From: Mobula hypostoma
Lineage: Eukaryota
NCBI RefSeq assembly: GCF_963921235.1
Contig: NC_086106.1
Location: 117,118,001 to 117,182,000 of the forward strand
Length of the DNA stretch: 64,000 nt
Direction: 5' to 3'
The position numbers and the translations under genes are program-made. Shown in pieces: positions 22,269 through 59,683 of the stretch. The notes beneath the pieces were generated by a model, which was given only the letters and a program-made list of their open reading frames with translations, made no database searches and was not told the DNA's origin. Position 1 is the stretch's first letter; every line of letters starts with the position of its first letter.

Positions 22269-22359
22269 GAGTTAGTCCTGACGAAGGGTCTCGGCCTGAA
22301 ACGTCGACTGCACCTCTTCCTACAGATGCTGCTTGGCCTGCTGCGTTCACCAGCAACTT
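22269..22359 (+). mobile_element. 91-bp Penelope-like 3' end with intact hammerhead motif (22274-22309)
   Basis: AGTCCTGACGAAGGGTCTCGGCCTGAAACGTCGACT; flanked by TGATATGTAGCAT at 22256-22268 and 22360-22372. Confidence 0.85.
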
Positions 22360-23187
22360 TGATATGTAGCATTATTTTGCCTAGGAAGGTTTCTCTTTGC
22401 AGTACCACCTGCAAAGGGAAGATGCTTTTCCATGAAAGGTTTGGTACTTTGGGTGTTCCGTTAGCAAAAGAGTGAGGAATATCAAATAAAATTACATTGT
22501 TTCTTTTCTATTTTTCTATGTACCTCTGTCTATGAGTGTTGAGACCTTCCTTTGGTCAGGGTCGACCATGGATATTAACATCTTCGCTGCCTTCTTGATA
22601 CACAAGCCAGAGCAGTACAATAATGAGAGCAGCTGTTGCCCGTGTAGCAGACTCCTCCTCTCTACACAGCTGATGAGTTGAAAGGAACGGCAGAGACCAA
22701 CCACGTCACGGGAGTTACCAGTCGGCATTGAACTCAACAAGGGACTCCAGCTCTGGATTTTTTGTTGGCGTTTACTCCTAAAGCCTGCCCTATCTGTGGG
22801 TTCAGTGGCAAGGCAGCAGACATTTGAGATCAGAGATTTTGTTCTCCTAGATGAGCTGCCAACCACAACTGAAGAGCCCCATCTGCCTGAAGTGACTGGT
22901 TTTAAGGCACCAGTGACCTGCCTTTTTTCCCCTTCTGTCAGCAGTGGTTTTGCTGGGCTTAGTAGTTAAGCCACACGTGAAGGCCAGGAGCTCGACTTGA
23001 TTGTCAGAGGCTATTTGAGACGAATGCCATTGGGAGCATTTAAAAGGTAGTGGGAATTTATCCCCATTACCACCCAGGCTATAACAACCTTAAAGAACTG
23101 GCTCTGGCTATGAATGTAGAACACATAGCGAAGCATAACTTCACTCTAAATAGAAGATATCCATCCAGACAGCCACAAAGTTGATTT

Positions 23188-23344
23188 TTGGATCTCTCCC
23201 TCCCCCTCCAACTTTCAAATCCCTTACTCACTCTTCCTTCAGTTAGTCCTGACGAAGGGTCTCGGCCTGAAATGTCGACTGCACCTCTTCCTACAGATGC
23301 TGCCTGGCCTGCTGCGTTCACCAGCAACTTTGATGTGTGTTGTG
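23188..23344 (+). mobile_element. Penelope-like 3' end with hammerhead motif (23245-23280; GAAATGTC variant)
   Basis: Near-identical to about 59590-59745; flanked by ACAAAGTTGATTT at 23175-23187 and 23345-23357. Confidence 0.85.
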
Positions 23345-23600
23345 ACAAAGTTGATTTAGTTGTTTTGAAAGGTAACCTTTGCTATTGAGCAGATTTGGTT
23401 CAAATGCCTGTCATGACTGTTCAAGATCAAATGAAAAATTAATTTTGGACAAATTGTTCCAGCCTCCATACTAATAGTTATGTTTCAGTTACCTTAAGTT
23501 CGTATTTGATTAAATTTTTAATCTGATCTCATTTTAATAGTTAAACCTTTTACTTGTATTCTATGTCTTGGCTTTCCATTTCTTCTTTTCCCGATAATAG

Positions 23601-23699
23601 GTCAGGAATACCCTGCGATTGTAGAATTTGCCCCATTTCAGAAAATTCCAAAAAAGAAAAGCAAGAAAAAGGATGCAAAAGCAGGAACTGTTGAAGATG
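23601..23699 (+). CDS. UPF3B: UPF3B exon 4
   Basis: AG|GQEYPAIVEFAPFQKIPKKKSKKKDAKAGTVED|GT; 99 nt. Confidence 0.96.
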
Positions 23700-24861
23700 G
23701 TACTGACAGTATACATTTTAGTGATGGTATGGAGTGTTTATCTTATTTATATAATATAAATGCTTGTAAACTGTTTTTATGTGATTGTTTTGTTTGTGTG
23801 CTTTGAATTTCAGGTAGATTTTTAAGGTGTAACTTGGGTATCCTGATTGTACCAACTTCAGATACAAGCATGTAAATTTTTGGGCTATGCCTGAAATGTT
23901 ATCACTGGCAGACATAAAGTATCCTGTGGCTCAATGCAAGCTCTTTCTAGTGTGTTAACCTTTTCTGCTTCATGATCCTCAGTCAATGCATTTTTAAAAA
24001 TATGTGCATTCTAGGCTGAACAAATTTATTGCAATGACAGATTAAATAGCAACCATATCTGTTGGTCTGGAGTTGCATGTGGTCCAGAACAGATAGGGAC
24101 ATTGATGGACCAGGTGTGTTAGAGTATCACTTAAGATAATTATTTGTTGCAATTACTGATTCAAATTCTAGTTTTTTTTTAATTCCCACCTGCTGTGGTG
24201 GGATTGAACTGGTGTTTTATGAATCATGAGCCAACCATCGATTAACTGTTCAGTAGTTAACCATTGCATTTTGACTACTCAGACTACACTGACCCCAGAG
24301 AGATAATCAGTTTTAGATTAAGCTCTAAATGCAATTTGATAGTGATGTGTACATGTGGCTGTTGCATTTCTTACATTACCAAAAGTGACAAATAACTGGC
24401 TCCTAAGTGCTTTGACACATTCTAAAAAGGATGTGAAAGGCTCTGTGGAAATGCAAGTGTTTCCTTATTTTTGGCTAGAAGATAGACTTTGGATTTATCT
24501 CAGAGCATGGGGTTTTATCAAGGAAATGAAGAATTCCAAATTGTGCCTTCAATCCATCATGATACTACTTTTGTGCTGTACTCATTTTTATTCCATTATC
24601 TTGGGGGAAATGATTTAAATGAAAGACAAATGTTGAAAAAACAATCCTTCACTGGTTTCAAGTTTGAAAAACGACAGATTTTAGTAGAAAATACTGGAAA
24701 CACTCAGAAGGCTATGAAAGAGTAAAACGGGATTGACATTTTGGGTTGGTGCTGCTTATTCTGTTGAAATAATTACTAAAGCTTCAACAGCATAGAAGTA
24801 TAGGCCTGGAATGTTAAATATTTTGCTCTTCAGAGATGTAACCTGTCCTTCCCAGTATTTT

Positions 24862-25073
24862 AGCAACACACATCAAAATGTTTGGATCTCCCCCTCCCCC
24901 TCCCACTTTCAAATCTCTTACTAGCTCTTCCTTCAGATAGTCCTGACGAAGGGTCTCGGCCCGAAACGTCAACTGTACCTCTTCCTACAGATACTGCCTG
25001 GTCTGCTGCGTTCACCAGCAACTTTGATGTGTGTTGCTTGAATTTCCAGCATCTGCAGAATTCCTCGTGTTTA
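24862..25073 (+). mobile_element. Penelope-like 3' end with hammerhead motif (24939-24974), 35-nt tail and short inverted arm
   Basis: Begins AGCAACACACATCAAA, the reverse complement of the element end; flanked by CCTTCCCAGTATTTT at 24847-24861 and 25074-25088. Confidence 0.85.
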
Positions 25074-26073
25074 CCTTCCCAGTATTTTGTTTTTTTTATT
25101 TCCAGCACCTGCTGTTTTGATTTTCAAATACTTTAGTGAAATGCTTTACATGGTATGAATTTGGTTAATGAATGCTTTGCTGTTTAACTTTGAGACAAAT
25201 GACCTAGCATGAACCACCGTAAATAAGTATGATTGTTGCTAGTTCTCATCCTGGGGTTCAATGATGCAGATATTTCTGTGGCTTGTTTTAATTGTCTTTC
25301 AGCCAAGCAATTTGTATTATGTATTTTGTTCACAACACTCTTAAGTATACTATAGTTGCTTGTGGACCAGTGTTGTTAGCAGTTGGAGAGGAATCTATTG
25401 AGGAAACAATTGCCTTTGATGAAGAAAGTGGCATTAAAATACAGACTTTGTTAGGAGATCAGGGAGTACCAATTCTTAAGACTTGGGTTTTCTAGTGAGG
25501 AGATCAGTGCTCCTTGTTGCTATCACCATATTGACTAAGTCTATTGAATAGATACAATTTTAAAGTGCATATATCAATTACGGGGGAAAAGATTTGTAGT
25601 GTGTTAGATTCAATTTTTTAAATTCCTGTTTATTTCACTGGCTTGGAGGTTAAAGCTCTTTCCCCTTCTGAAGTTCAGATTACAGGTTTGAATCCAACTC
25701 CAGTGTTCACAGGTACAAAGTTCAGGTTAACTCTTTGCTAGAATACTAAGTTTGTGTATTATAGGTCCGGTAAAAAATTAGTTTGAAGCCTCAGTATGTA
25801 GTACCTTGTAGTAATTGGCATTATTTTGTCCCTGATCCACTGTGGGAATAAGTGCCAAGTAAACACAATGTGCTGATCTGGAGATGAAAGTTCATATTTC
25901 CATGGCAGTTCTGAATGATCCTATCCTCCAAATAGTAAAAGTTTGTCGTGTTTCTGATAAGGGAAATAGAGCAGTTTTTCAAAAATAGAAGACCTTGACT
26001 TAATTGCTTCGATTTTGATTGCGTTTGCTTTGAAATTAGCTGAATTTCTGCTCACTCTTTTGTATTTTATCAG

Positions 26074-26187
26074 ATCCTGAATACAAAAAGTTTTTGGAGA
26101 GTTATAATAATATGGATGATGAGAAAAATTCAAACAATCCTGAAACACTTCTGGAGGAAATTGAAGCAAAAACAAAAGAACTGGCTG
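26074..26187 (+). CDS. UPF3B: UPF3B exon 5
   Basis: AG|DPEYKKFLESYNNMDDEKNSNNPETLLEEIEAKTKELA|GT; 114 nt. Confidence 0.95.
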
Positions 26188-27135
26188 GTAAATAGAACTG
26201 CTTCAAAAAAAATCTAAAGCTTCTAAATCTTTATTTACTTGTTTATAAAAGAGTTGCAGAAATGATGATTCTGTAAATTATTGCTTTAAGTAATCTTGTG
26301 CTCTTTAATACTGAACGCTTTTCCATAAATGAAACTTTTTGTTTTAATAATTGTTAATGAAGATCTACAATAAAAGCAGTTTGCTCTATTGTCTTCGATC
26401 AAAAAGAACCATCAATATAGGCCACCACGGTGGTGTAGCGGTTAACATGATGTTATTACAACTCGGGGCATCAGATTTCAATTCTGGTGTCCTCTGTAAA
26501 CAAGTCTGTATGTTCCTTCCTGTGTGCCTGTGGGTTTCCTCCCACAGTCCAATGAAGGTTAGTAGGGTCATCATAAATTGTCTTGTGATTTGAAAGGGCC
26601 TGTTCCCTGCTGTATCTCTAAATAAAAAAAAATAATGATTTCTGGTATAATTTTGAGCATATAAGGGTAATGGCAGGTTTCATTCTTCTAAGGTGAATTG
26701 TAAAAGTTTGCTAATTTAATATCAAGCAATAATGTATTTTGCTAATTTTAATCAATATGTAATTAGGCCTAACATTGAATGCTTGTGTACATGTGATTTG
26801 AGTTGCTATTATTTAAAACAATATGTATCTTGTTAATGTTGTATTCCTGAATGATGATTAGGGAGTCCTAGGTTTCTGCTTGCTACCACCTGCCCCCAGT
26901 TACATTCATGCACTTCAGAAATGCAGCATTGATGCTAATGGAGCTTTTTGTGTATCTTGGGTCTTTTACAAAGACACTGTGTACTGATAACCATTTGTAC
27001 TTGTTTCTTGAGCAGTAATTTTCCCTGGGTTGTGCTACATGTCAGTGTATATGGTTTATTCAGCGTTTTCTCTAATTTTACAGGCAATCAGAAGTTTTTG
27101 CATTAGTGTAAATGGATAATATTTTTAATTCACAG

Positions 27136-27179
27136 CCAAGAAAACAACACCTCTTCTGGACTATGTAAAAACTAAGCAG
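27136..27179 (+). CDS. UPF3B: UPF3B exon 6
   Basis: AG|AKKTTPLLDYVKTKQ|GT; 44 nt; conserved TTPLL motif. Confidence 0.95.
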
Positions 27180-27287
27180 GTAAAGATTCACACCCCCCCC
27201 CTCCCTCAATTTGTTATTTTGAAAATTATTATTATTTCCCCCATACATGCTGTTAATTTATGAATGTGTCATTGTTTTCTGTACCAG

Positions 27288-27479
27288 AGAATAAGAGAGG
27301 AAAAAAGAGAAGAAAGGAGGAGACGGGAGCTGGAAAAAAGGAGACTTCGCGAAGAAGAAAGAAGAAAATGGAGAGAGGATGAAAGGCGAAAAAGGAGGGA
27401 AGCAGAGAAACAAAAGAAGATGGTAGAGAAAGGGTTTGACAAAGAAAAGGATCGGTCAAAGGATGAACCAAAGATAAAG
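27288..27479 (+). CDS. UPF3B: UPF3B exon 7 (charged coiled-coil-like region)
   Basis: AG|RIREEKREERRRRELEKRRLREEERRKW...KDEPKIK|GT; 192 nt. Confidence 0.95.
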
Positions 27480-27564
27480 GTGCACTATAATGTCAGTATA
27501 TCTACAGAATTGCTATATTAACCAGTAAAATATGTAACGGGAATCTATCTCAATGGATTTGTAG

Positions 27565-27719
27565 CTTCTGAAGAAGCCAGAAAAAGGGGATGACTCCTGC
27601 ATGGAAAAGCCAAAGGACAAACTAAAGAAACTGGACAGAGAAAGGGCTAAAGAAGACAGGTCATTCATTGCCCAGGGAAAAAGACTGGAGAGTTCCATCA
27701 AGGATGATAAAGGAAAAAA
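27565..27719 (+). CDS. UPF3B: UPF3B exon 8
   Basis: AG|LLKKPEKGDDSCMEKPKDKLKKLDRE...DDKGK|GT; 155 nt, ends phase 2. Confidence 0.92.
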
Positions 27720-27944
27720 GTACGTGGGACTAAATGGAATTAATTGTATCTGTTGTCTTGCTATTTGTTTCGTTACCTGTGATTATAAATCAGTACTAGA
27801 GTACAGTGAACCACAAGTAGTGGTCCTCCCTGTACACTCTTATAAAGGCTGCTCTGGTCAATCTTTGCCAAACATCCGTTAGCCTTTTTCTCGCAATAGA
27901 CTTTGAAGGCTGCTATAGCATAGCGGTTGCAATACTAGATTCAT

Positions 27945-29080
27945 AATTTCTAAACGGAGTAAATCAGAGGTGCAAAGGAACTTGGAAGTCCTGGTGCAAG
28001 ATTCCCTGAAGGGAAAATGGAGACACCTCTTTCTCCCTTATTGGGGGGAGAGAGAACCTGCAGTACATCGAATACCAGGTGAAACATGAAGTCTTTGGGG
28101 TAGCTGTGTCTTTGCTATTGCTTTGCTCATGCTTCAGTGCTCAGCAGTGTCGATACTTTTTTTTGCCGGTGGGGGGAGGGGGGATTGTTACTCACTGCCA
28201 CGCGAGCGGGAAGGGGAAGCTGGTGGAGGGGACTTCGGGGTTCTGACATTTAACTGTCATTCATTCTTTGGGGCACTCCTCTGTTTTCGTGGGTGGTTGT
28301 GAAGAAAAAGCATTTTGGGATGTATATTGTATATATTTCTCTGATATTAAATTGTGCCTTTGAAGTTGTGTCGGTGATAAGGACGGCAACTGCAATGATA
28401 GCATTCATTTCAAGACTACTGCATTAGAAGAGCAAGGATGTGATGCTGAGTCTTTATAAGGCATTGGTCAGACTGTTCTTGGTGTAAGCAGGTTTAGGAC
28501 CGCATCTAAGAAAGGGTATGATGGCAATGGAGAAGATCAAAAGGGGTGTTCATGAGAATGGTCTCGGGAATGATGGGGTTAAAGTATGAGGAGCGTTTAA
28601 TGGCTCTAGGCCTGTACTCACTGCAGTTTAGAAGGATGAGGAGGTGGGGGGGGGGGATCTCAATGAAACCTATTGAATATTGGAAGACCTGTATAGAGAG
28701 GATGCCCACTATGGGAAATGAGTCTAATACTAAAGGGCACAGCCTCAGAATAGAGGAGCGTCCTTTAGAACAGAGATGGGGAAGAATTTCTTAGAGAGTG
28801 GTGAATCTGTGTAGTTCATTGACACGGATGGTGTGGAGGCCAAGTCATTGTGTATACATAGACCATAAGACATTAGGAGCAAAATTACTCCATTTGGCCA
28901 TTGAGTCTGCTCGATATAAAGTGGAGGTTGATAGGCTCTTGATCGGTAAGGTCATCAAATGTTACAGGGAAAAGACCAGGAGAATGGGGTTGAGAGGGAT
29001 AATAAATCGGCCATTATGGAATGGTGGAGCAGATTCAATGAGCCGAATAGCTTAATTCTGCTCCTATGTCTTATGGTCTT
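27945..29080 (+). mobile_element. CR1 3' fragment containing a nested non-autonomous repeat (about 28010-28345)
   Basis: YEERLMALGLYSLQFRRMR; TCTTATGGTCT tail. Confidence 0.8.
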
Positions 29081-29269
29081 CTAATCATTTATGCTGGAAC
29101 CTGTCCCACCACAGCAGGTTGGAAATTAGAAATGAAAAGCGATCTATTTGTTTCTGGGCCGGCCTTTATCTTCTACAGCATTGTGGTTGACTTAGCTGCC
29201 CTGTGAACGGGCCTCTTCATTCTGAGTCATGTAGAAACCCATAATGAATACTAGCATTTCAGATACGCC

Positions 29270-30300: not shown

Positions 30301-30435
30301 TTATTTATTTAGCTGTATAGTGTGGATTAGGCCCTTCTGGCCCTTTAAGTTGTGCCGACAACAACTCCTGATTTAGCCCTAGCCTGATCATGGGAAAATT
30401 TACAATGAAATATTAACCTACTAACCAGAACACAT

Positions 30436-33324: not shown

Positions 33325-36300
33325 CAGTGCCTATAAAAAGTATTCAGCCCCCCTGGAAGTTTTCATGGTTTATTGTTTTACAACACAGTGGATTTAGAAG
33401 CATAGAAAACCTACAGCGCAATACAGGCCCTTCGGCTCACAAAGTTGTGCCGAACATGTCCTTACCTTAGAAATTACTAGGCTTACCTATAGCCCTCTAT
33501 TTTTTTTAAGCTCCACGTACCTATCCAAAAGTCTCTTAAAAGACCCTATCATATCCACCTCCACCACTGTTGCCGGCAGCCCATTCCACGCACTCACCAC
33601 TCTCTGAGTAAAAAAACTTACCCCTGACATCTCCTCTGTACCTACTGCACAGCACCTTAAACCTGTGTCCTCTTGTGACAACCCTGGGAAAAAGCCTCTG
33701 ACTATCCACACGATCAATGCCTCTCATCATCTTATACACCTCTATCAGGTTACCTCTCATCCTCTGTCGCTCCATGGAGAAAAGGCCACATTCACTCAAC
33801 CTATTCTCATAAGGCATGCTCCCCAATCCAGGCAACATCCTTGTAAATCTCCTCTGTACCCTTTCTATGGCTTCCACATCCTTCCTGTAGTGAGGCAACC
33901 AGAACTGAGCATAGTACTCCAAGTGGGGTCTGACCAGGGTCCAATATAGCTGCAACGTTACCTCTCGGCTCCTAAATTCAATTCCACAATTGATGAAGGC
34001 CAATACACTGTACGCCTTCTTAACCACAGAGTCAACCTCTGCAGCTGCTTTGAGCGTCCTATGGACTTGGACCCCAAGATCCCGCTGATCCTCCACACTG
34101 CCAAGAGTCTTACCATTAATACTATATTCTGCCATCATACTTGACCTACCAAAATGAACCAGCTCACACTTATCTGGGTTGAACTCCATCTGCCACTTCA
34201 CAGCCCAGTTTTGCATCCTATCAATGTCCCGCTGTAACCTCTGACAGCCCTCCACACTATCCACAACACCTCCAACCTTTGTGTCATCAGCAAACTTACT
34301 GACCCATCCCTCCACTTCCTCATCCAAATCATTTATAAAAATCACGAAGAGTAAGGGTCCCAAAACAGATCCCTGAGGCACACCACTGGTCACCGACCTC
34401 CATGCAGAATATGACCCGTCTACAACTACTCTGCCTTCTGTGGGCAAGCCAGTTCTGGATCCACAAAGCAATATCCCCTTGGATCCCATGCCTCCTTACT
34501 TAATAAGCCTTGCATGGGGTACCTTATCAAATGCCTTGCTGAAATCCGTATCTACATCCATTGCTCTTCCTTCATCAATGTGTTTAGTCACATCCTCAAA
34601 AAAATTCCATCAGGCTCATAAGGCACGACCTGCCCTTGACAAAGCCATGCTGACTATTCCTAATCATATTATGCCTCTCCAAATGTTCATAAATCCTGCC
34701 TCTCAGGATCTTCTCCATCAACTTACCAACCACTGAAGTAAGACCCACTGGTCTATAATTTCCTGGGCTACCTCTACTCCCTTTCTTGAAAAAAGGAACA
34801 ACATCCGCAACCCTCCAATCCTCCAGAACCTCTCCCGCCCCCATTGATGATGCAAAGATCATCGCCAGAGGCTCAGCAATCTCCTCCCTTGCCTCCCACA
34901 ATATCCTGGGGTAGATTTCATCCGGTCCCGGCAACTTATCCAACTTGATGCTTTCCAAAAGCTCCAGCACATCCTCTCTCTTAATATCTACATGCTCAAG
35001 CTTTTCAGTCTGCTGCAAGTCATCACTGCAATCACCAAGATCCTTTTCCATAGTGAATACTGAAGTAAAGTATTCATTAAGTACCTCTGCTATTTCCTCC
35101 GGTTCCATACACACTTTCCCACTGTCATACTTGATAGGTCCTATTCTTTTACGTCTTATCCTCTTGCTCTTCACATACTTGTAGAATGCCTTGGGGTTTT
35201 CCTTAATCCTGCCCACCAAGGCCTTCTCATGGCCCCTTCTGGCTCTCCTAATTTCCTTCTTAAGCTCCTTCCTATTAGCCTTATAATCTTCTAGATCTCT
35301 AACATTACCTAGCTCTCTGAACCTTTTGTAAGCTTTTCTTTTCTTCTTGACTAGATTTATTACAGCCTTTGTACACCACTGTTCCTGTACCCTACCATAA
35401 CTTCCCTGTCTCATTGGAATATACCTATGCAGAACTCCACACAAGTATCCCCTGAACATTTAATTTGGACTTTTGATACTGATCAACAAAAAAGACTCGT
35501 GTCAAAGTGAAAACAAATTTCTACAAGTTGGTCTAAATTTATTACAATTATTAAACACAAAATAGATTGCATAGTTACTCATCCCCTTCAAGTACATATT
35601 TAGTGGATGCACCTTTGGCAGCAATTACAGCCTTGAGTTGGTGTGGATAGGTCTCTATCAGATTGCATGGAGATCATGAGTGAACAGCCCTTTTCAGGTC
35701 ACATTCTCAATTGGATTGAGGTCTGGACTCTGACTTGGCCACTCTAGGACATTAACTTAGTTGTTTGTAAGCCATTCCTGTGTAGCTTTGGCTTTATGCT
35801 TGGAGTCATCGACTTGCTGGAAAACGTATCTCCTCCCAAGTTGCAGTTCTTTTGCAGACTGCCTCAGTTCTTCCTCCAGGATTTCCCTGTGTTTTGCCGC
35901 ATTCATTGTACCCTCTACCTTCACAAGCTTTCTAGGGCCTGCTGCAGTGAAGCATCCCCACAGCATGAGGCAGCCATCACCATGCTTCACAGTAGGGATG
36001 GTGTGCTATTGATGACGTGCAGTGTTTGGCTTATGGCAAACATAACATTTAGTCTGATGGCCAAAAAGCATTATTTTGGTTTAATCAGACCATAGAAGTG
36101 TCTTCCAGCTGACTTTAAAGTCTCCCACATGCCTTCTGGCAAATTCTAGCCAAGATTTTGAGTCTTTTTCAGCAGTGGCCTTCTCTTTGCCATTCTCAAT
36201 TAAAGCTGTAACTAGTGAAGCACCCGGGCAACAATTGTTTTATGTACAGCCTCTCCCATTTCAGCCACTGAAGATTGCAACTCTTCCAGAGTTGTCATAG

Positions 36301-47069: not shown

Positions 47070-50000
47070 AGAGCAAAGAGTTAGACTCTACCACACAGGC
47101 AAAATTCAAATGGGCAATGAATGCAGGATCGAAGGTGCTGTATTTAAATGCACTTAGCAGTTGGAATAAGGTGGACGGACTCATGGTGCAATTAGAGATT
47201 GGTCAGCATGATGTTGTGGGCATCACTGAGTCATAGCTGAAAGAAGGCCATAGTTGGGAGCTTAACATCAAAGGATATACTTTGTATCGAAAGGACAGGC
47301 AGGAAGGCATAGGCGGTGGTGTGGTTCTGTTGGCAAGACATGGAATTACATCTTTAGAAATAGGTGGCATAAGGAATGTTGAATCTTTGTGGATGGAGTT
47401 AAGAAACTGCAAGGGTAAAAAAAAACATGATGGGAATCATATATGGGCTTCCAAGATGTAAGGGTTGCAAAGGGATCTGGAAAAGGCATGTGATAAGGAT
47501 AATGACACGATTATAATGGGGGACTTCAATATGCAAGGAGATTGGGAAAATCGGGTTGGTGTCAGATCGCAAGACAGGGAATTTGTTGAATACCTACAAG
47601 GTGGGTTTTTAGAGCAGCTTGTGTTTGAGCCTACTCGGGAAAGGCTATCTTAGACTGGGTATTGTATAATAACCCAGATCTTATTAGGGAGCTTGATGTA
47701 AAGGAAGCCTTAGGAGGTAGTGATCAATTTTAAGGCATCCGTTAGTCTCGTGAGACCATGGATTTGTGCCTTGGAAGGTTGTATGGAAGACCTGCAGTTG
47801 CCCATGCTGCAAGTCTCCCCTCTCCACGCCACCGATGTTGTCCAAGGGAAGGGCAAGGGCCGATACAGCTTGGCACTGGTGTCATTGTAGAGCAATGTGT
47901 GGTTAAGTGCCTTGCTCAAGGACACAACACGCTGCCTCAGCTGAGGCTCGAACTCATGACCTTCAGATCACTAGACCGACTCCTTAACCACTTGGCCACG
48001 TGCCAACACTTAGTGATCAATAATAAGATTGAATTCATACTGCAATTTGAGAGGGAGAAGCATAAGTCACATGTAACAGTATCATAATGAAATAAAGGGA
48101 ATTACAGAGGAATGACAGAAGGTGGATTGGAGGAAGATACTGGCAGGGATGACAACAGAACAGAGGTGGCTGAAGGTTCTGGGAATAATTCACAAGGCAC
48201 ATGATAGATATGTCCCTCAGAAGAGGATGTTCTCAAATGGCAGAGATAGGCAACCGTGGCTGACAAGAGAAGTTAAGGACTGCGTAAAAGCCAAGGAAAA
48301 GGCATGTAAGTAGCAGAAGTGAATGGGAATTTGAATGATTGGAAAGCATGTAAAATCCAACAAAAGGCAACTAAAATAGCTATAAAAAGGGAAAAGATGA
48401 AATATGAGGGCAAATTAGCCAATAATATAAAGCAAAATACTAAACATTTTTCAGTTATATCAAGAATAAAAGGGGGGTGAGAGTTGATATTGGACCACTG
48501 GAAAATGGTGCTGGTGAGGTAGTAATGGGGGATAAAGAAATGGCAGATGAACTTAATGGGTACTTTGGATCTGTCTCACTGTGGAAGACACTAGCAGTGT
48601 GCCAGAGGTCCGTGAGTGTCAGAGAGCAGGAGTGAGTGCAATTGCTATTGCAAAGGAAAAAAGTGCTAGGCAAACTGAAAAGTCTTAAGGTGGATGTCAC
48701 CTGGACCAGATGGACTACATCCCAGAGTCCTGAGAGAGGTTGCTGAAGAGATAATGGATGCATTGGTCATGATCTTTCAAGAATCACTTGATTCTGGCAT
48801 GGTTCCAGAGGACTGGAAGATCGCAGATGTCACTTCACTCTTTAAGAAGGGAGGAAGGCAAAAGAAAGGAAATTATAGGCCAGTTAGCCTAACCTCAGTG
48901 ATTGGGAAATTGTTGGAGTCTATAATTAAGGACGAGGTTTCAGAGTGCTTGGAGACTAATGATAAAATAAGTCAAAGTCAGTATGGTTTCTGTAAAGGGA
49001 AATCTTGCCTGACAAATATGTTAGAGTTCTTCGAAGAAATATAAACAGAGTGGATAAAAGGAGAAGCAGTGGATGTCATTTACTTGAATTTCCAGAAGGC
49101 ATTTGATAAAGTGTCACACATGAGGCTGTTTAACAAGTTAAAATCCTGTGGCATTACAGGAAAGATTCTGGCGTGGATAGAGGAATGGCTGACAAGCAGG
49201 AAGCAGTGAGTTGGAAAAAAGGGCCTTTTCTGGTTGGCTGCCAGTCATTAATGGTGTTCCTCAGGGGTCAGTATTGGGACAGCTACTTTTCACATTGTTT
49301 GTCAATGATATAGATAGTGGAATTGATGGCTTTGTGGCAAAGTTTGCACATACGATACGAAGATAGGTGGAGGAGTAGGTAGTGCTGAGGAAGCAATGCA
49401 ATTGCAGCAGGACTTGGCCAAACTGGAAGAATGGGCAAAAAAGTGACAGATGGAATACAGTGTTGGGAAATGTATGATAATGCATTTTGGTAAAAGGAAC
49501 AATAATGCAAACTACTGTATTATCTAAATGGAGAGAAGGTTCAAATATCAGAGGTGCAGAGGGACCTAGGAGTCCTTGTGCAAGACTCCCAGAAGGTTAA
49601 TTTACAGGTGGAGTCTATGGTAAAGAAGGCAAATGCAATGTTGGCATTTCTTTCAAGGGGAATAGAATATAAAAGCAAGGAAATAATGCTAAGCTTTTGT
49701 AAGAAACTAGTCAGGCAGCACAGTATTGTCAGCAGTTTTAGGGCCCGTATCTCAGAAAGGATGTGCTGTTGTTGGAGAGGGTCCAGAGGAGGTTCACGAG
49801 AATGATTCCAGGAGAGAAGGGGTTAACATATGAGGAGTGTTTGGCAGCTTTGGGTCTGTACTCAGTGGAATTTGGAAGAATGTAGGGGAGATCTCATTGA
49901 AACGTATGGAATGTTGAAAAGACCAGATAAGCTGGATATGGAGAGGATGTTTCCTCTGGTGGGGGGTATCCAGAACTAGAGGGCACAGCCTCACAATTGA

Positions 50001-52260: not shown

Positions 52261-52446
52261 AAACACAAGAGATTCCACAAGTGCTGGAAATCCAAAGCCC
52301 CACACACAAAATGGCAGCAGATCAGGCAGCATCTTTGGAGAGGAATCAACAGTCGACATTTTGGGGTGAATAGTCTTGGCCATGGATTCATTTCCATAGA
52401 TGTTGCCTGACCTGCTGAGTTCCTCCAGCAGGTTGTGTGTTTTGCT
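52261..52446. mobile_element. Degenerate palindromic pair of Penelope-like 3' ends
   Basis: Inverted tailed arm plus forward arm; flanked by CTGTTTATTAAATCGC and CTGTTTATTAGATCAC (2 mismatches). Confidence 0.7.
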
Positions 52447-52792: not shown

Positions 52793-52798
52793 TTTATT
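52793..52798 (-). terminator. Candidate SOWAHD polyadenylation signal
   Basis: TTTATT on plus strand (AATAAA on minus), about 0.94 kb downstream of the stop. Confidence 0.4.
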
Positions 52799-52991
52799 GT
52801 CTCCATTATTAATCCTAGTCTTTATAATTGATACTCAATCACACAATCAAATTACACATAGTAATAAGCCACCTTGAAAAAGATTGTCAGCTACACACTT
52901 ATGGTACAAAATAGAGATTTCTAGTACAAAAGTTCCTGAATGAAGTAAAATTTAAACCGATTTTTTGGAAAACATACTGAAAATAAATATA

Positions 52992-53216
52992 AAGAGAAGA
53001 GATTCTGCAGATGCTGAAAACCCTGAGTAACACACACAAAATGCTGGAGGAACTCAGCAGACCAGGCAGAATCTGTAGAAAGGATGAACAGTTGACCCTC
53101 ATCAGGACGGGAGGGGAAGGGGGAAGAAGTCAGAATAAGCAGCTGGAAGGAGGGGAACGAGTACAGGCTGGAAGGTGATAGGCGAAACCAGGCAAGGGGC
53201 AAGGTAGGTGAGTGGG
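52992..53216 (-). mobile_element. Penelope-like 3' end with internally deleted hammerhead
   Basis: Homologous to the family 3' end; flanked by GAAAATAAATATA at 52979-52991 and 53217-53229. Confidence 0.72.
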
Positions 53217-53737
53217 GAAAATAAATATAGTCTAAGATCTAGTATTAAATCTTATCAATTCAGTAGCATCATCACACAATTACCATCGTCACCAGGTACC
53301 AAATCTATTATTTTCCTTATTTATAAATTGCACATAAAAATAACGACTAAGAAATTCCAGTACTACTCCCAGAACACATACTGTAGTTACTTGTGGGAAG
53401 TATAGATGTGACATCTCATCGTGCAAGGACTCTTAAAGTGAAAAGCTTTTTTTGATTAAATTTACCATTTGAAAATGGAAACCATTATGTTATAAAATGT
53501 CAGGAAAATATGTCATTATTTCGAGAGCAAATAATTGTGCTTTTGAACGCAATTCAAACGCACTGTCACATTAAATTTTAGACATTAATGTTCGTTGGCT
53601 CATTTGCTGTCTGGCAGCGATTCCTTCGCAGAGGTAAAGTGCTTTGGGGTGCCCCGTCAATAGGAACATGGCTGGTGCTATAGAAAATTTAGTAGTGCCG
53701 GGTTCTCAGTCTACACCGCGTCTATAGTGTACGCAGT

Positions 53738-54721
53738 CTAAAACGAGGTGCGTTTCCACCAACGCCGATAATTTGCTTGTAAGATTCTCTGCAATGAGGC
53801 GATTACAGGGAATTGGGGCTTTTTCAACTGACCGTCCACCTGAGTTTCCTCCGCCTCCTGCGACCGGGCGCACTTCTTGGAGTGGTCTGCCGTCCCGTGC
53901 GGGCGCTCCCGGTTCTCCGCCCCGACCAGCTCCCGGAATTTGCCGGGGACCCCGCTGGCCAGGTAATGGCAGGCTTTCCTACCGCCGAAGTCACGGGCAT
54001 CCACGTCGACGTTGTAGGCGCCGATCAGTAGCTTGATGACCATCTGGTGTCCCTGCATGGCCGCCAGGTGCAAGGGTGTGTGACCCCCTCCCCCGGCCCG
54101 ACAGTTCAGGTCCAGGCGCAAGCCGCGATCTTCCGCCAGGCGCACCAGTTCCCGCAGCGCGCCGTCGTTTCCCTGCTTGGCGAGCCAGTGCGCCGCCGTC
54201 AGCCCCGTCACCGGATCCTTCCTGTTCAACAGACTGGGCACCGAGTCCAGCAGAGCGGTCAGCTTCTCCAGATCGCCTCCGGCCGCTGCCATCATCCACT
54301 CGTGCTCGGCCAGACCCTCGTCCATCGGGTCCTCTCCATCCAGCCGCTGATCTGCCGCTACTTTCCTGCTCTGCGCCCGAGCCCCCGCGCTCACGCCGGA
54401 GTCGCACCGCTCCAGCCGCAAACTTCGGCGGGAGATCCGGCGAGCTGCGAGCGACCCCGTCAGCGGCTGCGTCCGCGCCGCATTTGCGCCGACCAGTTCG
54501 TCCGTCGCTTGCAAGAAGCGACCCAGGAGGCTGGACAGGCGGTTGACGTCCTCCAAGACCCGGTCGTAGGTCGGACAGTGGCGGTCGCTGCCCTTGGTGG
54601 GCAGCGTGTCCCAGTCGTGGTCCGCAGCCACCAGCCGATCTCCCTCGGGGGTCTGAGCCAGGGGTACTCCCTTGGTGGCTGGAAGGAACCGACCGCGGCT
54701 CGCCTCGATCTTCTCAAACAT
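53738..54721 (-). CDS. SOWAHD: Ankyrin-repeat protein of the Sowah family, single exon (likely SOWAHD)
   Basis: 327-aa ORF in a CpG island with EHEWMMAAAGG, KDPVTGLTAAHWLAKQG and GGGHTPLHLAAMQGH...LIGAYNVDVDARDFGGRKACHYL ankyrin motifs; tail-to-tail with UPF3B, as SOWAHD is in mammals. Confidence 0.88.
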   Translation of the reverse strand: MFEKIEASRGRFLPATKGVPLAQTPEGDRLVAADHDWDTLPTKGSDRHCPTYDRVLEDVNRLSSLLGRFLQATDELVGANAARTQPLTGSLAARRISRRSLRLERCDSGVSAGARAQSRKVAADQRLDGEDPMDEGLAEHEWMMAAAGGDLEKLTALLDSVPSLLNRKDPVTGLTAAHWLAKQGNDGALRELVRLAEDRGLRLDLNCRAGGGGHTPLHLAAMQGHQMVIKLLIGAYNVDVDARDFGGRKACHYLASGVPGKFRELVGAENRERPHGTADHSKKCARSQEAEETQVDGQLKKPQFPVIASLQRILQANYRRWWKRTSF

Positions 54722-54779
54722 CCTGAGCCCGCTGGAGTCCTACCCCGTAAGGATCGTGCTCGGAGAGTCCAAAGTCCAA

Positions 54780-54900
54780 AATGAATTAGCGAACAAATGA
54801 GCCTTGAGTCACAGCTCGCTGCACCCCGCCCTACGGCACGCCTCCCGCGGAATTTCCATCACGCGGAAGGCCAAACAGGCGTAGGCACCCGCTGGTCTCC
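54780..54900 (-). promoter_or_regulatory. SOWAHD proximal promoter motifs
   Basis: AP-1 TGAGTCA at 54805-54811, GC box near 54824, NF-kB-like CGGAATTTCC at 54848-54857, ETS-like CGGAAG near 54864, all at the CpG island edge. Confidence 0.45.
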
Positions 54901-55129
54901 TCAAATCGGCTCTCGCTTCTACTTTCTGCTTCTCATAAACTAAAGGACATGCATCTAAATTAAAAGGGGGAAAGTTTAAAGGAGATCTTTTTTTTCTTTA
55001 CGCAGAGTGGCAACGTACTGTGTTACTGTTGTAGACAGCTAACTTATATTTCTGACTGAGCAACCTTGCGACAATTTACTTTGGGATAAATGAAGTTTTA
55101 TCTTATTTTATATCTGGGTCTATTGCCCG

Positions 55130-55490
55130 TGACCATAAAACATAGAAGCAGAATAAGGCAATTCGGCCCATCTAATCTGCCTTGCCATTCTATCACGGTT
55201 GATTGTTTAATCCCTCTTAAACCTATTCTCCTGCCTTCTCCCCGCACCTTTTGTCGCCCTTACTGATCAAATACAGTACGTGTCAACCTCCACGTTAAAT
55301 ATACCCAAAGACTTGGCCTCCACAACAGTCCTTAGCAATGAATTCCAAAGATAAATTCCGCCTGATCTCTTTTCTGAGCGACACCCTTCTATACTGAGGC
55401 TGTGCCCTCTGGTCGTTGACTCACCCACGATTGAAAACATCCACCCCACTTTCACTCTGTCTCGGCGTTTTCAATATTCGATATTGAATA
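55130..55490 (-). mobile_element. CR1 3' end
   Basis: GESTTRGHSL...LWNSL...EAKSLGIF. Confidence 0.75.
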
Positions 55491-55819
55491 TATTGATACC
55501 GACCCTTATTGAACCTATAAGACACTGTTGATAAATCTGTTTTGCAGGAAGTTTACTGTAAACTGAGTACTGTTACTTGAGTGAACAGTGCAATAGAATG
55601 GAACGGTGAGGTAGGGTTGTAGTGTTTATGATCAGAAGATATAGGAGCATATTAGGCCATTTGGCCCATCGAGTCTGCTCTGTCATTTTATCATGGTTAA
55701 TCCCATTTTCCTCTCAGCCCCAATCCTGTCACCTTTTCATTTATTCCTTTCCCAGATACATTACCTCCTTCAGAATCCATCACCACCATTTATACCCTTC
55801 AGGAAACGTTCAGAAATAT

Positions 55820-55857
55820 GAGAGAGAGAGAGAGAGGGAGAGGGAGAGGGAGAGAGA
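55820..55857 (+). repeat. (GA)n/(GGGAGA)n purine microsatellite next to the CR1 tail
   Basis: Direct inspection. Confidence 0.85.
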
Positions 55858-55862
55858 ATGAG

Positions 55863-57029
55863 AATAGAAACATAGAAACATAGAAAATAGGTGCAGGAGT
55901 AGGCCATTCGGCCCTTCGAGCCTGCACCGCCATTTATTATGATCATGGCTGATCATCCAACTCAGAACCCAGCCTTCCCTCCATACCCCCTGACCCCTGT
56001 AGCCACAAGGGCCATATCTAACTTCCTTTTAAACATAGCTAATGAACTGGCCTCAACAGTTTGCTGTGGCAGAGAATTCCACAGATTCACCACTCTCTGT
56101 GTGAAGAAGTTTTTCCTAACCTCGGTCCTAAAAGGCTTCCCCTCTATCCTCAAACTGTGACCCCTCGTTCTAGACCTCCCCAACATCGGGAACAATCTTC
56201 CTGCATCTAGCCTGTCCAATCCCTTTAGGATCTTATACGTTTCAATCAGATCCCCCCTCAATCTTCTAAATTCCAACGAGTACAAGCCCAGTTCATCCAG
56301 TCTTTCTTCATATGAAAGACCTGCCATCCCAGGAATCAATCTGGTGAACCTTCTTTGTACTCCCTCTATGGCAAGGATGTCTTTCCTCAGATTAGGGGAC
56401 CAAAACTGCACACAATACTCCAGGTGTGGTCTCACCAAGGCCTTGTACAACTGCAGTAGTACCTCCCTGCTCCTGTACTCGAATCCTCTCGCTATAAATG
56501 CCAGCATACCGTTCGCCTTTTTCACCGCCTGCTGTACCTGCATGCCCACTTTCAATGACTGGTGTATAATGACACCCAGGTCTCGTTGCACCTCCCCTTT
56601 TCCTAATCGGCCACCATTCAGATAATAATCTGTTTTCCTATTTTTGCCACCAAAGTGGATAACTTCACATTTATCCACATTAAATTGCATCTGCCATGAG
56701 TTTGCCCACTCACCCAACCTATCCAAGTCACCCTGCATCCTCTTAGCATCCTCCTCACTGCTAACACTGCCACCCAGCTTCGTGTCATCCGCAAACTTGG
56801 AGATGCTGCATTTAATTCCCTCATCCAAGTCATTAATATATATTGTAAACAACTGGGGTCCCAGCACTGAGCCTTGCGGTACCCCACTAGTCACCGCCTG
56901 CCATTCTGAAAAGGTCCCGTTTATTCCCACTCTTTGCTTCCTGTCTGCTAACCAATTCTCCACCCACACCAATACCTTACCCCCAATACCGTGTGCTTTA
57001 AGTTTGCACACTAATCTCCTATGTGGGTA
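55863..57029 (-). mobile_element. Young 5'-truncated CR1 LINE
   Basis: Uninterrupted 349-aa RT C-terminal ORF ([17 protein letters not shown]); 3' tail of 8-nt repeats (CATAGAAA on plus strand). Confidence 0.95.
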
Positions 57030-58106
57030 TGAATGAATGAATGAGAATGAAAATCCTGGGAGTGTTTATATCGACTGTTCAGTGAATCTTGTTCCCAACT
57101 CCAAACTCAGCTCCTTCCCCTCACGTTCTTTATACTGGCCCCGTTCCAAAGTTCAAAGTAAATATATGTCATCTTATATTACTGAGATTTATTTCTTGCA
57201 GGCATTTACAGGAAAATAAATGCAACAGAATTTATGAAAAATTACACATAATCAATGACAGCCGACGTGCAAAGACAAATATTAAAAATACAAAATTAAT
57301 TTTTAAAAATTAGTAAATAAATGATATTGAGAATCTGAGCTGTAGAGCCCTTGAAAGCGAGCTCCTGGGTTGTGGAATCTGTTCGGAGTTGAGGTGAGCG
57401 AAACCGGTTCAGGAGCCTGATGGTTGAAGGGTAATTAATGGCCGTTCCAGAACCTGGCGGTGTGGGATCCAAGGTTCCTGAGCCCCCTTCGCGATGGCAT
57501 CAGCGAGAAGAGAGCCTGGCCTGGCTGGTGGGAGTTCCCTCCTGCTTTCAGTCCCCATGAGGGGCTCCAACCCGTATTGTCAACCATCCGCTCCCATCCA
57601 CATCAGCGGCAACGGCGATAGGTAAAAAATAACGCGTTAACACCGCTGAGTTTATCAACCAAATGACACCAAGAACGTAAAGGGATTTGTAACCTATCTG
57701 TTCCTCCATACATGTATTATTATGAACAAAATGTTTTTGAAATAAAACACTCACTGCACAGAATCTGCCTGACCCGCTGAATTCCCCCAACAGGTTTTTT
57801 TTGCTTTAAGCTCCCCTCCCGTGACATTAACATAAGTTTAAAATAACCCCTGACTCTTTAAAGAGGAACCCGGTCACGAGAGTTCTATTAAAGCAGAACT
57901 GAAAATTCATTCAGATGCCCTGTCCAGGAAACAGCTCTAAAATAAATCTCCATGTCACCGTCAACAATCTCGTATCTCAAGATAAAACCATATCAACAAT
58001 TTATAAGCAAACAACAGGAATTCTGCAGATGCTGGAAATTCAAGCAACATACATCAAAGTTGCTGGTGAACGCAGCAGGCCAAGCAGCATCTATAGGAAG
58101 AGGCGC

Positions 58107-58142
58107 AGTCGACGTTTCAGGCCGAGACCCTTCGTCAGGACT
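58107..58142 (-). ncRNA. Minimal hammerhead ribozyme motif (inverted arm)
   Basis: Exact reverse complement of the 36-nt motif at 59648-59683. Confidence 0.82.
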
Positions 58143-59647
58143 AACTGAAGGAAGAGTGAGTAAGGGATTTGAAAGTTGGAGGGGGAGGGGGAGATGCAAA
58201 ATGATAGGAGAAGACAGGAGGGGGAGGGATGGAGCCAAGAGCTGGACAGGTGATAGGCAAAAGGGGATACGAGAGGATCATGGGACAGGAGGTCCAGGAA
58301 GAAAGACAAGGGGGGGTGACCCAGAGGATGGGCAAGAGATATATTCAGAGGGACAGAGGGAGAAAAAGGAGAGTGAGAGAAAGAATGTGTGCATAAAAAT
58401 GAGTAACAGATGGGGTACGAGGGGGAGGTGGGGCCTTAGCGGAAGTTAGAGAAGTCGATGTTCATGCCATCAGGTTGGAGGTTACCCAGACGGAATATAA
58501 GGTGTTGTTCCTCCAACCTGAGTGTGGCTTCATCTTTACAGTAGAGGAGGCCGTGGATAGACATGTCAGAATGGGAATGGGATGTGGAATTAAAATGTGT
58601 GGCCACTGGGAGATCCTGCTTTCTTGTAAGGGCATGTGTAGCACTTGTTCCGCTTACACGGATTACGCTTATGCTTACATCTCCCCCATTTCACGTACAT
58701 CTGCTCTCACTCCATCCTCCCGCCACCCCACTAGGAATAGCGTTCCCCTGGTCCTCACCTACCACCCCACCAGCCTCCGGGTCCAACATATTATTCTCCG
58801 TAACTTCCGCCACCTCCAACGGGATCCCACCACGAAGCACATCTTTCCCTCCCCCCCTCTGCATTCCGCAGGGATCGCTCCCTACACAACTCCCTTGTCC
58901 ATTCGTCCCCCCCATCCCTCCCCACTGATCTCCCTCCTGGCACTTATCCGTGTAAGCGGAACAAGTGCTACACATGCCCTTACACTTCCTCCCTTACCAC
59001 CATTCAGGGCCCCAAACAGTCCTTCCAGGTGAGGCATCACTTCACCTGTGAGTCGACTGGGGTGATATACTGCGTCCGGTGCTCCCGATGTGGCCTTTTA
59101 TATATTGGTGAGACCCGACGCAGACTGGGAGACCGCTTTGCTGAACATCTACGCTCTGTCCGCCAGAGAAAGCAGGATCTCCCAGTGGCCACACATTTTA
59201 ATTCCACATCCCATTCCCATTCTGACATGTCTATCCACGGCCTCCTCTACTGTAAAGATGAAGCCACACTCAGGTTGGAGGAACCACCTTATATTCCATC
59301 TGGGTAGCCTCCAACCTGATGGCATGAACATCGACTTCTCTAACTTCCGCTAAGGCCCCACCTCCCCCTCGTACCCCATCTGTTACTCATTTTTATGCAC
59401 ATATTCTTTCTCTCACTCTCCTTTTTCTCCCTCTGTCCCTCTGAATATACCTCTTGCCCATCCTCTGGGTCACCCCCCCCCTGTCTTTCTTCCCGGACCT
59501 CCTGTCCCATGATCCTCTCGTATCCCCTTTTGCCTATCACCTGTCCAGCTCTCGGCTCTATCCCTCCCCCTCCTGTCTTCTCCTATCATTTTGCATCTCC
59601 CCCTCCCCCTCCAGCTTTCAAATCCCTTACTCACTCTTCCTTCAGTT

Positions 59648-59683
59648 AGTCCTGACGAAGGGTCTCGGCCTGAAACGTCGACT
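59648..59683 (+). ncRNA. Minimal type I hammerhead ribozyme motif at the Penelope-like 3' end
   Basis: Stem I AGTC/GACT, CTGACGA core, stem II hairpin, GAAA, palindromic ACGT stem III, GTC cleavage triplet. Confidence 0.82.

What the first reader, a model, noticed from the sequence alone, without database searches (positions are those of the whole stretch)
22274..59683. Dispersed family of minimal hammerhead ribozymes carried by a Penelope-like retroelement
Seen: the 36-nt motif AGTC-CTGACGA-AGGGTCTCGGCCT-GAAACGTC-GACT is exact at 22274, 58107 (minus) and 59648. Near-exact variants occur at 23245 and 24939, and degenerate ones near 4291, 10058, 13600-13655, 20976 and 53090. It folds as a type I hammerhead: stem I AGTC/GACT, CUGANGA and GAAA cores with one extra A before stem II, a loopless palindromic ACGU stem III, and a GUC cleavage site. 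In the long copies it sits about 300 nt after the stop of a GIY-YIG ORF. Established: Penelope-like elements carry minimal hammerheads whose tiny stem III is thought to require dimerisation. Inference: this genome contains a very high density of such ribozymes, about ten remnants in 64 kb and at least two subfamilies. The class is known; the possible novelty is the lineage, copy number and variants.
Basis: partly seen in the sequence, partly recalled or inferred. Interest (0 to 1): 0.8.

Follow-up and report, generated by a model that had tools for sequence, protein, structure and literature searches.

The report
Penelope retroelement minimal hammerhead copies
This stretch of a ray genome is littered with dead, shortened copies of a Penelope-like jumping gene, each carrying near its tail the tiny "minimal hammerhead" self-cutting RNA motif already known from such elements, so it is a clean new example of a known thing, not a new kind of ribozyme.

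Summary
The 36-nt motif is exact at 22274(+), 58107(-) and 59648(+). It has 1 mismatch at 23245 and 2 at 24939, against 0 expected by chance. Degenerate relatives lie at 4291, 10058, 13590-13660, 20976 and 53090. About 14 "motif + tail" remnants occur in 64 kb, in two subfamilies.

The interpretation also holds. The motif sits 293-295 nt after the stop of a GIY-YIG ORF of a Neptune-like Penelope-like element (PLE) with a CX4CX2C linker. All copies are 5'-truncated insertions with their own 11-15 bp target-site duplications. Three are head-to-head inverted pairs with a ~30-nt tail extension on one end only. These are published PLE hallmarks (PMC8557442).

The motif has the published min-HHR features (PMC4209133): both core boxes, a bulged A before helix II, a loopless palindromic ACGU helix III and a GUC site. 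Unrelated PLEs from metagenomes carry the same architecture with different stems.

Caveats:
- The youngest copies have G10.1·U11.1 instead of G-C.
- Thermodynamic folding prefers an inactive hairpin.
- Rfam does not detect the motif.
- No RNA reads were available, so cleavage is untested.

The scan's first readers noted the same family in other windows of this genome. Verdict: a new member of a known kind, of low to moderate interest.

The parts
59648..59683 (+). Minimal type-I hammerhead motif, exact copy: helix I AGUC/GACU, CUGACGA box, bulged A, helix II GGGU/GCCU with CUCG loop, GAA box, loopless ACGU helix III, cleavage after GUC
58107..58142 (-). Minimal hammerhead motif, exact copy, in the inverted arm
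22274..22309 (+). Minimal hammerhead motif, exact copy, inside a 92-nt mini-insertion
23245..23280 (+). Hammerhead motif with C15.2>U. Helix III becomes AUGU, still self-pairing through wobbles.
24939..24974 (+). Hammerhead motif of an older copy. It keeps the canonical G10.1-C11.1 pair but has G1.1>A, which breaks the first pair of helix I.
20976..21011 (+). Degenerate hammerhead of the old subfamily (CUGAAGA, ACAU, U17). It still passes the descriptor.
58008..59747 (.). One 1740-bp insertion made of two head-to-head 5'-truncated PLE copies. The minus arm is 58008-58624, with tail extension 58008-58038. The plus copy runs from about 58680 to 59747 and has a short tail. The arms are 97.6% identical over 586 nt. 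A 15-bp TSD lies at 57993 and 59748.
59029..59353 (+). GIY-YIG endonuclease coding remnant of the plus copy. The frame is broken by a 2-nt gap at 59284 relative to the other arm, and by an earlier frameshift near 58850. The linker CKRNKCYTC lies just upstream.
58436..58621 (-). C-terminal GIY-YIG coding remnant of the minus arm. Its stop is 293 nt before the motif.
19198..21078 (+). Older, decayed 5'-truncated PLE copy: RT (from about residue 260 of 816-891-aa relatives) through EN, then 3' UTR, hammerhead and tail. It has many stops and frameshifts.
22269..22360 (+). 92-nt mini-insertion (hammerhead + tail) starting 5 nt before the motif. A 12-bp TSD lies at 22257 and 22361.
23188..23344 (+). 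157-nt insertion starting 57-59 nt before the motif. A 13-bp TSD lies at 23175 and 23345.
24862..25073 (.). 212-nt insertion: a 16-19 nt inverted tail piece, then a plus copy with the tail extension. A 15-bp TSD lies at 24847 and 25074.
4287..4381 (+). Old 95-nt mini-insertion starting 4 nt before a hammerhead that lacks 3 nt of its core. An 11-bp TSD lies at 4276 and 4382.
10058..10155 (+). Old copy truncated inside the hammerhead: the CUGA box is missing. It keeps G10.1-C11.1.
13488..13719 (.). Old head-to-head pair whose junction lies inside the hammerhead, so both motifs are chimeric. The minus arm carries the tail extension and the plus arm does not. A TSD of about 13 bp lies at 13475 and 13720.
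52990..53095 (-). Old copy with a large deletion in the hammerhead. It has the tail and the tail extension.
52315..52446 (.). Short head-to-head pair of tail-only remnants (52315-52369 minus, 52388-52446 plus)
59860..59909 (-). Tail-only remnant of the old subfamily

Best explanation
The motif is the minimal type-I hammerhead (min-HHR) of an EN+ Penelope-like retroelement of Neptune-like type. It lies in the 3' UTR/pseudo-LTR region, about 295 nt after the GIY-YIG stop and about 65 nt before the end of the element. Shown here: the copies are products of separate target-primed insertion events. Each is heavily 5'-truncated and has its own 11-15 bp target-site duplication. Some have an inverted truncated partner and a one-sided ~30-nt tail extension. 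Inferred from the literature: in the transcript of an active, tandemly arranged master element, two copies of the motif pair through the palindromic ACGU, and through helix I, into a double hammerhead. This cuts after GUC, probably slowly and with help from protein or a chaperone, and trims the PLE RNA. The copies in this window are passengers of that amplification. They are not individually functional ribozyme genes.
For: The motif copies are far above chance. A GIY-YIG domain lies upstream, and RT-to-EN coding remnants match 772-891-aa RT+GIY-YIG ORFs. The CX4CX2C linker is present. TSDs are exact at six insertions. Inverted arms and one-sided tail extensions match the published PLE anatomy (PMC8557442, PMC11167929). 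[quoted passage not shown] Independent PLEs carry the same architecture 170-210 nt after their EN stop, with unrelated helix I and II sequences and the published U3/A8 core covariation (L003, and L006/L007 counted once). In those the extra GACG/CGUC pairing of the rival hairpin is absent. Thousands of contigs from runs of three coded organisms lie on the element, and many carry the tail extension.
Against: Nothing here tests cleavage: only assembled contigs were available, and no run on record as RNA. The four youngest copies have G10.1·U11.1, not the highly conserved G10.1-C11.1. The nearest-neighbour model prefers a rod-like hairpin for the monomer (-10.0 kcal/mol) and an extended duplex for the dimer (-28.3), against -9.5 for the double hammerhead. 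No Rfam hammerhead model scores the motif. Within the window there is no two-sided compensatory change in any helix. Published work found low in vitro activity for such motifs (PMC4209133). It also found that hammerhead mutants of an Anolis PLE still insert in vitro (PMC11167929).
Confidence: 0.85

Rival explanations
1. The block has a hammerhead-like sequence but in this family it mainly acts as a structured 3' UTR element, for example a hairpin or protein-binding site used by the element's RT. Self-cleavage would then be weak or dispensable.
For: The monomer MFE fold is a rod hairpin using GACG/CGUC pairing. The double hammerhead is not energetically favoured. The master lineage replaced C11.1 by U at a CpG and still produced at least four later insertions in this window. 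Hammerhead mutants do not impair PLE insertion in vitro, and no RNA-seq ends were seen at the cut site in Anolis (PMC11167929). Naiad PLEs proliferate without hammerheads (PMC8557442).
Against: The rod's extra pairs are not kept in other PLE lineages (L003, L006), whereas the hammerhead core, the bulge and the palindromic helix III are. G·U at 10.1/11.1 still pairs. Dimeric cleavage of PLE hammerheads is reported in the literature (Lunse 2016, cited in PMC6765202; the paper itself is not held).
Confidence: 0.2
2. The short copies of 92-160 nt are not random truncations. They are discrete non-autonomous elements (SINE-like or monomeric retrozyme-like) made of hammerhead plus tail, and the PLE mobilises them in trans.
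For: The 5' ends cluster. Two copies start 4-5 nt before the motif (22269, 4287) and two start 57-59 nt before it (23188, about 24881), each with its own TSD. Contigs of organism C break at 59648-59650. A 2026 preprint derives animal retrozymes from PLE pseudo-LTRs (10.64898/2026.07.22.740005). First readers noted a 97-bp mini-element elsewhere in this genome (s1-143309, unchecked).
Against: There are only four cases. T-runs and an inverted junction blur two of the ends. PLEs are known for extreme 5' truncation (PMC8557442). No tandem arrays of short units occur in the window. The short copies carry no sequence that the long copies lack.
Confidence: 0.25
3. The hammerhead resemblance is a chance feature of an abundant repeat.
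For: Rfam finds nothing, and abundance alone would multiply any motif.
Against: All 11 core nucleotides, the bulge, the palindromic helix III and the position downstream of GIY-YIG match a published family. They recur in unrelated PLEs with different stems.
Confidence: 0.02

Closest known systems
Minimal hammerhead ribozymes (min-HHR) of metazoan Penelope-like elements (Cervera & De la Pena 2014, PMC4209133; Lunse, Weinberg & Breaker 2016, cited in PMC6765202)
   Same: Type-I topology, CUGANGA and GAAA boxes, a short 4-5 bp helix I, an unpaired nucleotide before helix II and no loop 3. Positions 15.2-16.2 are palindromic. The motif lies in the PLE terminal repeat/3' region, is very abundant as single dispersed motifs, and sometimes occurs as nearby pairs on opposite strands.
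   Different: The youngest subfamily has G10.1·U11.1 instead of the highly conserved G10.1-C11.1. Helix II is only 4 bp, against 6-8 bp in the Schistosoma and Drosophila examples. The host is a ray; no cartilaginous fish is named in the main text of PMC4209133.
Neptune / Poseidon EN+ Penelope-like elements of fishes and reptiles, e.g. PAc of Anolis (PMC11167929), and the PLE insertion anatomy in Craig et al. 2021 (PMC8557442)
   Same: An RT plus C-terminal GIY-YIG ORF and a CX2-5CxxC linker (Neptune-type). Also strong 5' truncation, an inverted 5'-truncated partner, a 30-40 bp tail present at one end only, and TSDs.
   Different: No full-length copy and no direct pseudo-LTR lies in this window. 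In PAc the ORF start overlaps the hammerhead; here the ATG 20 nt after the cut site runs into a stop within the tail, so that arrangement is not evident.
Non-LTR retrozymes of animals (PMC7229834; 10.64898/2026.07.22.740005)
   Same: Short non-coding units with type-I hammerheads whose weak helix III needs a second copy. They are proposed to derive from PLE pseudo-LTRs.
   Different: Retrozymes are tandem arrays that give circular RNAs. Here the short units are single, TSD-flanked and dispersed, and no circular or tandem form was seen in the window.
Rfam Hammerhead_1 / canonical type-I hammerheads
   Same: The catalytic core and the order of strands.
   Different: There is no helix III hairpin and no loop-loop tertiary contact. 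No Rfam model reaches even E=10 on the motif.

Membership tests
PLE minimal hammerhead (min-HHR) | Core nucleotides C3 U4 G5 A6 N7 G8 A9, G12 A13 A14, the A15.1-U16.1 pair and H17 | tested here: met
   All are present in the 5 young copies and at 20976.
PLE minimal hammerhead (min-HHR) | Short open helix I (4-5 bp) | tested here: met
   AGUC/GACU plus a U·G pair gives 5 bp. It is broken at 24939 by G1.1>A.
PLE minimal hammerhead (min-HHR) | Unpaired nucleotide between A9 and 10.1 | tested here: met
   With the A bulged, helix II is 4 bp with a CUCG loop; without the bulge it is only 3 bp. L003 and L006 show the same bulge.
PLE minimal hammerhead (min-HHR) | Highly conserved G10.1-C11.1 pair | tested here: not met
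   The pair is G·U in the copies at 22274, 23245, 58107 and 59648. It is G-C at 24939 and 10058. The change is C>T at a CpG.
PLE minimal hammerhead (min-HHR) | Palindromic 15.2-16.2 with no or a tiny palindromic loop 3, so that helix III forms only between two copies | tested here: met
   ACGU here, ACGU in L003 and AUAUAU in L006.
PLE minimal hammerhead (min-HHR) | Compensatory variation in helices I and II among family members | tested here: inconclusive
   The window shows only one-sided or wobble changes. Across PLE lineages the stems differ completely while still pairing, but that rests on only 3 lineages.
PLE minimal hammerhead (min-HHR) | Self-cleavage after H17 as a dimer | not testable with these tools
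   No raw RNA reads were available. Energy models do not favour the active fold.
EN+ Penelope-like element (Neptune-like) | Single ORF with RT followed by a C-terminal GIY-YIG endonuclease | tested here: met
   Pfam GIY-YIG is above its cut-off. The old copy at 19198-20771 aligns from RT through EN of 772-891-aa RT+GIY-YIG proteins. All copies here are truncated and broken.
EN+ Penelope-like element (Neptune-like) | CX2-5CxxC zinc-finger-like linker before EN | tested here: met
   CKRNKCYTC is in frame before the GIY-YIG domain. The rule comes from PMC8557442. No phylogeny was made.
EN+ Penelope-like element (Neptune-like) | Insertion anatomy: 5' truncation, inverted truncated partner, 30-40 bp tail at one end only, TSD | tested here: met
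   Three inverted pairs each have exactly one extended tail.
EN+ Penelope-like element (Neptune-like) | Direct pseudo-LTRs from partial tandem copies | tested here: inconclusive
   None is in the window. Contig joints 59722>59286/59291 in two runs suggest tail-to-body tandems elsewhere.
Non-LTR retrozyme | Tandem array of short hammerhead-bearing units | tested here: not met
   The copies are dispersed, each with its own TSD.
Rfam hammerhead families | Score at or above the gathering threshold | tested here: not met
   There were 0 hits at gathering and no hammerhead family at E<=10.

The most novel reading that the evidence does not exclude
The 92-160-nt 'hammerhead + tail' units may be a discrete non-autonomous element class in rays, with defined RNA 5' ends: one class starts 4-5 nt before the ribozyme and another about 58 nt before it. 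The Neptune-like PLE would mobilise them. The family's master lost the canonical G10.1-C11.1 pair and kept spreading, which would mean the motif is retained for something other than efficient self-cleavage, for example pairing two template RNAs. That could also explain the frequent head-to-head double insertions.
Probability: 0.15. Interest if true: 0.5.

Novelty: new member of a known kind. Interest (0 to 1): 0.25.

Why it matters
The finding adds a cartilaginous-fish lineage, with very high local density, to the known association of minimal hammerheads with Penelope-like elements. It also provides well-delimited, TSD-flanked insertions that display the published PLE integration signatures: an inverted partner and a one-sided tail. 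The one mildly informative point is that the most recently active subfamily carries G·U at the normally invariant 10.1/11.1 pair. That fits published doubts about whether hammerhead cleavage is needed for PLE transposition. It does not open a new question.

Tried and rejected
- **Rfam:** neither gathering thresholds nor a permissive E-value gave any hammerhead family. This is expected, because helix III has no hairpin.
- **Sequencing runs:** two searches returned only Logan contigs of uncertain kind and no raw RNA reads. The planned test for RNA ends at the GUC site could not be done.
- **Contig lay-down:** it shows abundance, the tail extension and tandem/inverted joints. Its lack of listed variants inside the motif is weak evidence: only 40 of 143 sites were shown, and about 2.8 sites would be expected in 70 nt.
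- **Cofolding:** it does not favour the double hammerhead.
- **The 3' module as a significant structure:** z = -0.39 and no covariation, so this was dropped.
- **Other RVT_1 ORFs (33.5-35.5 kb, 55.96-57.0 kb, 62.8-63.3 kb):** PLE proteins do not hit them in tblastn, so they are a different retroelement and unrelated to the motif.
- **An ORF starting just after the cut site, as in Anolis PAc:** the ATG at 59700 runs into a stop within or near the tail.
- **The 892-bp 'tandem' spacing upstream of 22274 and 23245:** it comes from two copies of another ~520-nt repeat. The hammerhead insertions beside them have different TSDs and different flanks.
- **Nearest protein relative P0001:** no DNA was served.
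- **Metagenome and viral scans:** few loci came back. Only L003 and L006/L007 carried a recognisable hammerhead, and L002 is cut by the contig end.
- **A fuzzy-regex scan:** it timed out.


Full report
**Observation**

The 36-nt motif is exact at 22274(+), 58107(-) and 59648(+). It has one mismatch at 23245 and two at 24939. None of 100 dinucleotide-preserving shuffles gave a match.
- A looser hammerhead pattern gives 8 hits against 1.3 expected, six of them from this family.
- blastn with the "motif + tail" module finds about 14 remnants. Eleven keep at least part of the hammerhead: 4296, 10030, 13524-, 13590, 20976, 22270, 23198, 24891, 53026-, 58039- and 59600. Three are tail-only: 52315-, 52388 and 59860- (alignment).
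- A young and an old subfamily differ by 20-24% in the tail.
- My own structural descriptor finds the four copies with an intact helix I plus 20976 (five sites). Thirty shuffled windows gave a mean of 0.33 hits.

**The carrier**

The piece 59029-59307(+) encodes a GIY-YIG domain (Pfam 24.4 bits, cut-off 22.6). In its frame it is preceded by CKRNKCYTC. This is the CX2-5CxxC linker that distinguishes Neptune/Nematis-type Penelope-like elements (PLEs) (rule from PMC8557442).

A whole-library HMMER search with this piece found 4863 relatives. They include 772-891-aa proteins with RVT_1 plus GIY-YIG. tblastn of those proteins against the window hits only three places:
- 19198-20771(+), an old decayed copy running from RT to EN;
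- 58439-58621(-);
- 58607-59350(+).

The other RVT_1 ORFs in the window are not hit, so they are a different retroelement. The motif starts 295 nt after the stop in the plus copy, 293 nt in the minus arm and about 205 nt in the old copy. The coding remnants are broken. The plus copy has a frameshift near 58850 and a 2-nt gap at 59284 relative to its partner arm. The old copy has many stops.

**Anatomy of the insertions**

Each copy is a separate insertion with an exact target-site duplication:

| Insertion | TSD length | TSD positions |
|---|---|---|
| 22269-22360 | 12 bp | 22257 / 22361 |
| 23188-23344 | 13 bp | 23175 / 23345 |
| 24862-25073 | 15 bp | 24847 / 25074 |
| 58008-59747 | 15 bp | 57993 / 59748 |
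| 4287-4381 | 11 bp | 4276 / 4382 |
| 13488-13719 | about 13 bp | 13475 / 13720 |

- The insertion at 58008-59747 is one event. It consists of two head-to-head 5'-truncated copies whose 586-nt arms are 97.6% identical.
- The insertions at 13.5 kb and 24.9 kb have the same head-to-head layout.
- In all three pairs exactly one end carries a ~30-nt extension beyond the normal tail. Many contigs from other runs also continue into this extension at 59748.

Strong 5' truncation, an adjacent inverted truncated copy and a 30-40 bp tail at one end only are described as typical of PLEs (PMC8557442). The tail has been tied to two internal RT start sites (PMC11167929). So this anatomy is confirmatory, not new.

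**The ribozyme reading**

Parsed as a type-I hammerhead, the motif reads as follows:
- helix I AGUC/GACU, plus a U·G pair;
- C3-A9 = CUGACGA;
- a bulged A;
- helix II GGGU/GCCU with a CUCG loop;
- G12-A14;
- A15.1-C15.2-G16.2-U16.1 with no loop;
- C17 as the cleavage site.

These are the features that Cervera and De la Pena list for PLE min-HHRs: a short helix I, a nucleotide between 9 and 10.1, and a palindromic 15.2-16.2. They argue that these features require a dimer, because helix III can form only between two copies (PMC4209133; also PMC6765202, which cites Lunse et al. 2016).

One listed feature is not met. The four youngest copies have G10.1·U11.1. The older 24939 and 10058 copies keep G-C. 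The change is a C>T at a CpG in the master lineage, after which at least four insertions still occurred in this window.

**Evidence from elsewhere**
- From the protein hits I fetched a PLE contig, L003. About 208 nt after its EN stop it carries a min-HHR with the published U3/A8 core covariation, a bulged A, helix II GGUU/AACC, ACGU, C17 and helix I UUCU/AGAA.
- L006 and L007 are one marine family with RT+EN. About 170 nt after the stop they carry a U3/A8 motif with a bulged G, a 6-bp helix II and a loopless AUAUAU helix III.
- The architecture and position are therefore kept while both helices change completely. The extra GACG/CGUC pairs of the alternative hairpin are not kept.
- L002 begins a CUGAAGA-A... 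motif at its very end and is cut off there.

**Limits**
- Rfam hammerhead models do not see the motif.
- ViennaRNA predicts an inactive rod for the monomer (-10.0 kcal/mol) and an extended duplex for two copies (-28.3). The double hammerhead evaluates at only -9.5, or -14.7 with C11.1. This agrees with the low in vitro activity and the suspected need for a cofactor in the literature (PMC4209133, PMC11167929).
- No run on record as RNA and no raw reads were offered, so the contigs cannot show RNA ends.
- Within the window no helix shows a two-sided compensatory change.

Cleavage, the need for a dimer and any role in transposition are therefore inferred from the literature and were not shown here.

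**Abundance**

Between 2,408 and 15,791 contigs per run, from three coded organisms, lie on the 1.1-kb stretch at 85% likeness or more. A fourth organism gave only 106. This is consistent with a very abundant family in some related species. Contig numbers are not copy numbers. Other first-reader notes report the same family in other windows of this ray genome; I did not check them.

**Open detail**

The 5' ends of the four short TSD-flanked copies fall into two classes: 4-5 nt before the motif (22269, 4287) and 57-59 nt before it (23188, about 24881). This could mean discrete RNA 5' ends or a non-autonomous mini-element. With four cases and some ambiguity at the ends, it is only a lead.

**Verdict**

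This is a new lineage and member of the known PLE minimal hammerhead, with a G·U variant at 10.1/11.1. Interest is low to moderate.

Noticed in passing
window 21680-22215, 22603-23110 and 47775-47885: These are copies of another unidentified ~520-nt repeat, 77-91% identical. Two of them each have a Penelope 3' fragment inserted 50-75 nt downstream. The two insertions have different TSDs and flanks, so this may be coincidence or a preferred target region.
   Followed up: partly
window 33536-35459(-), 55962-57011(-), 62829-63344(+), 1659-2102(+): RVT_1 reverse-transcriptase ORF fragments of a different, LINE-like retroelement. PLE proteins do not hit them in tblastn.
   Followed up: partly
window 53738-54721(-): An intact 327-aa ORF with ankyrin repeats lies in a G+C-rich patch (0.53). 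It was not examined further.
   Followed up: no
window 58008-58038, 25043-25073, 13488-13523, 52990-53025: The ~30-nt tail extension contains CAGCAUCU. This is complementary to AGAUGCUG at the start of the 3' module about 60 nt upstream, and it is invariant in four copies. No covariation supports a real pairing.
   Followed up: partly
window 59649/59691 (contigs of runs X5 and X19) and window 13590-13660: Strand-switch (inverted) junctions fall inside or at the edge of the hammerhead, both in contigs of other runs and in the old pair at 13.5 kb. This hints that the partly self-complementary motif may be a preferred template-switch point.
   Followed up: no
window 20976-24974: Another first-reader note says these plus-strand motifs lie in introns of a UPF3B gene in sense orientation. 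I did not verify the gene or its strand.
   Followed up: no
window 59776-59790: A G-run of 10-plus bases lies right after the 3' TSD of the 1.74-kb insertion.
   Followed up: no
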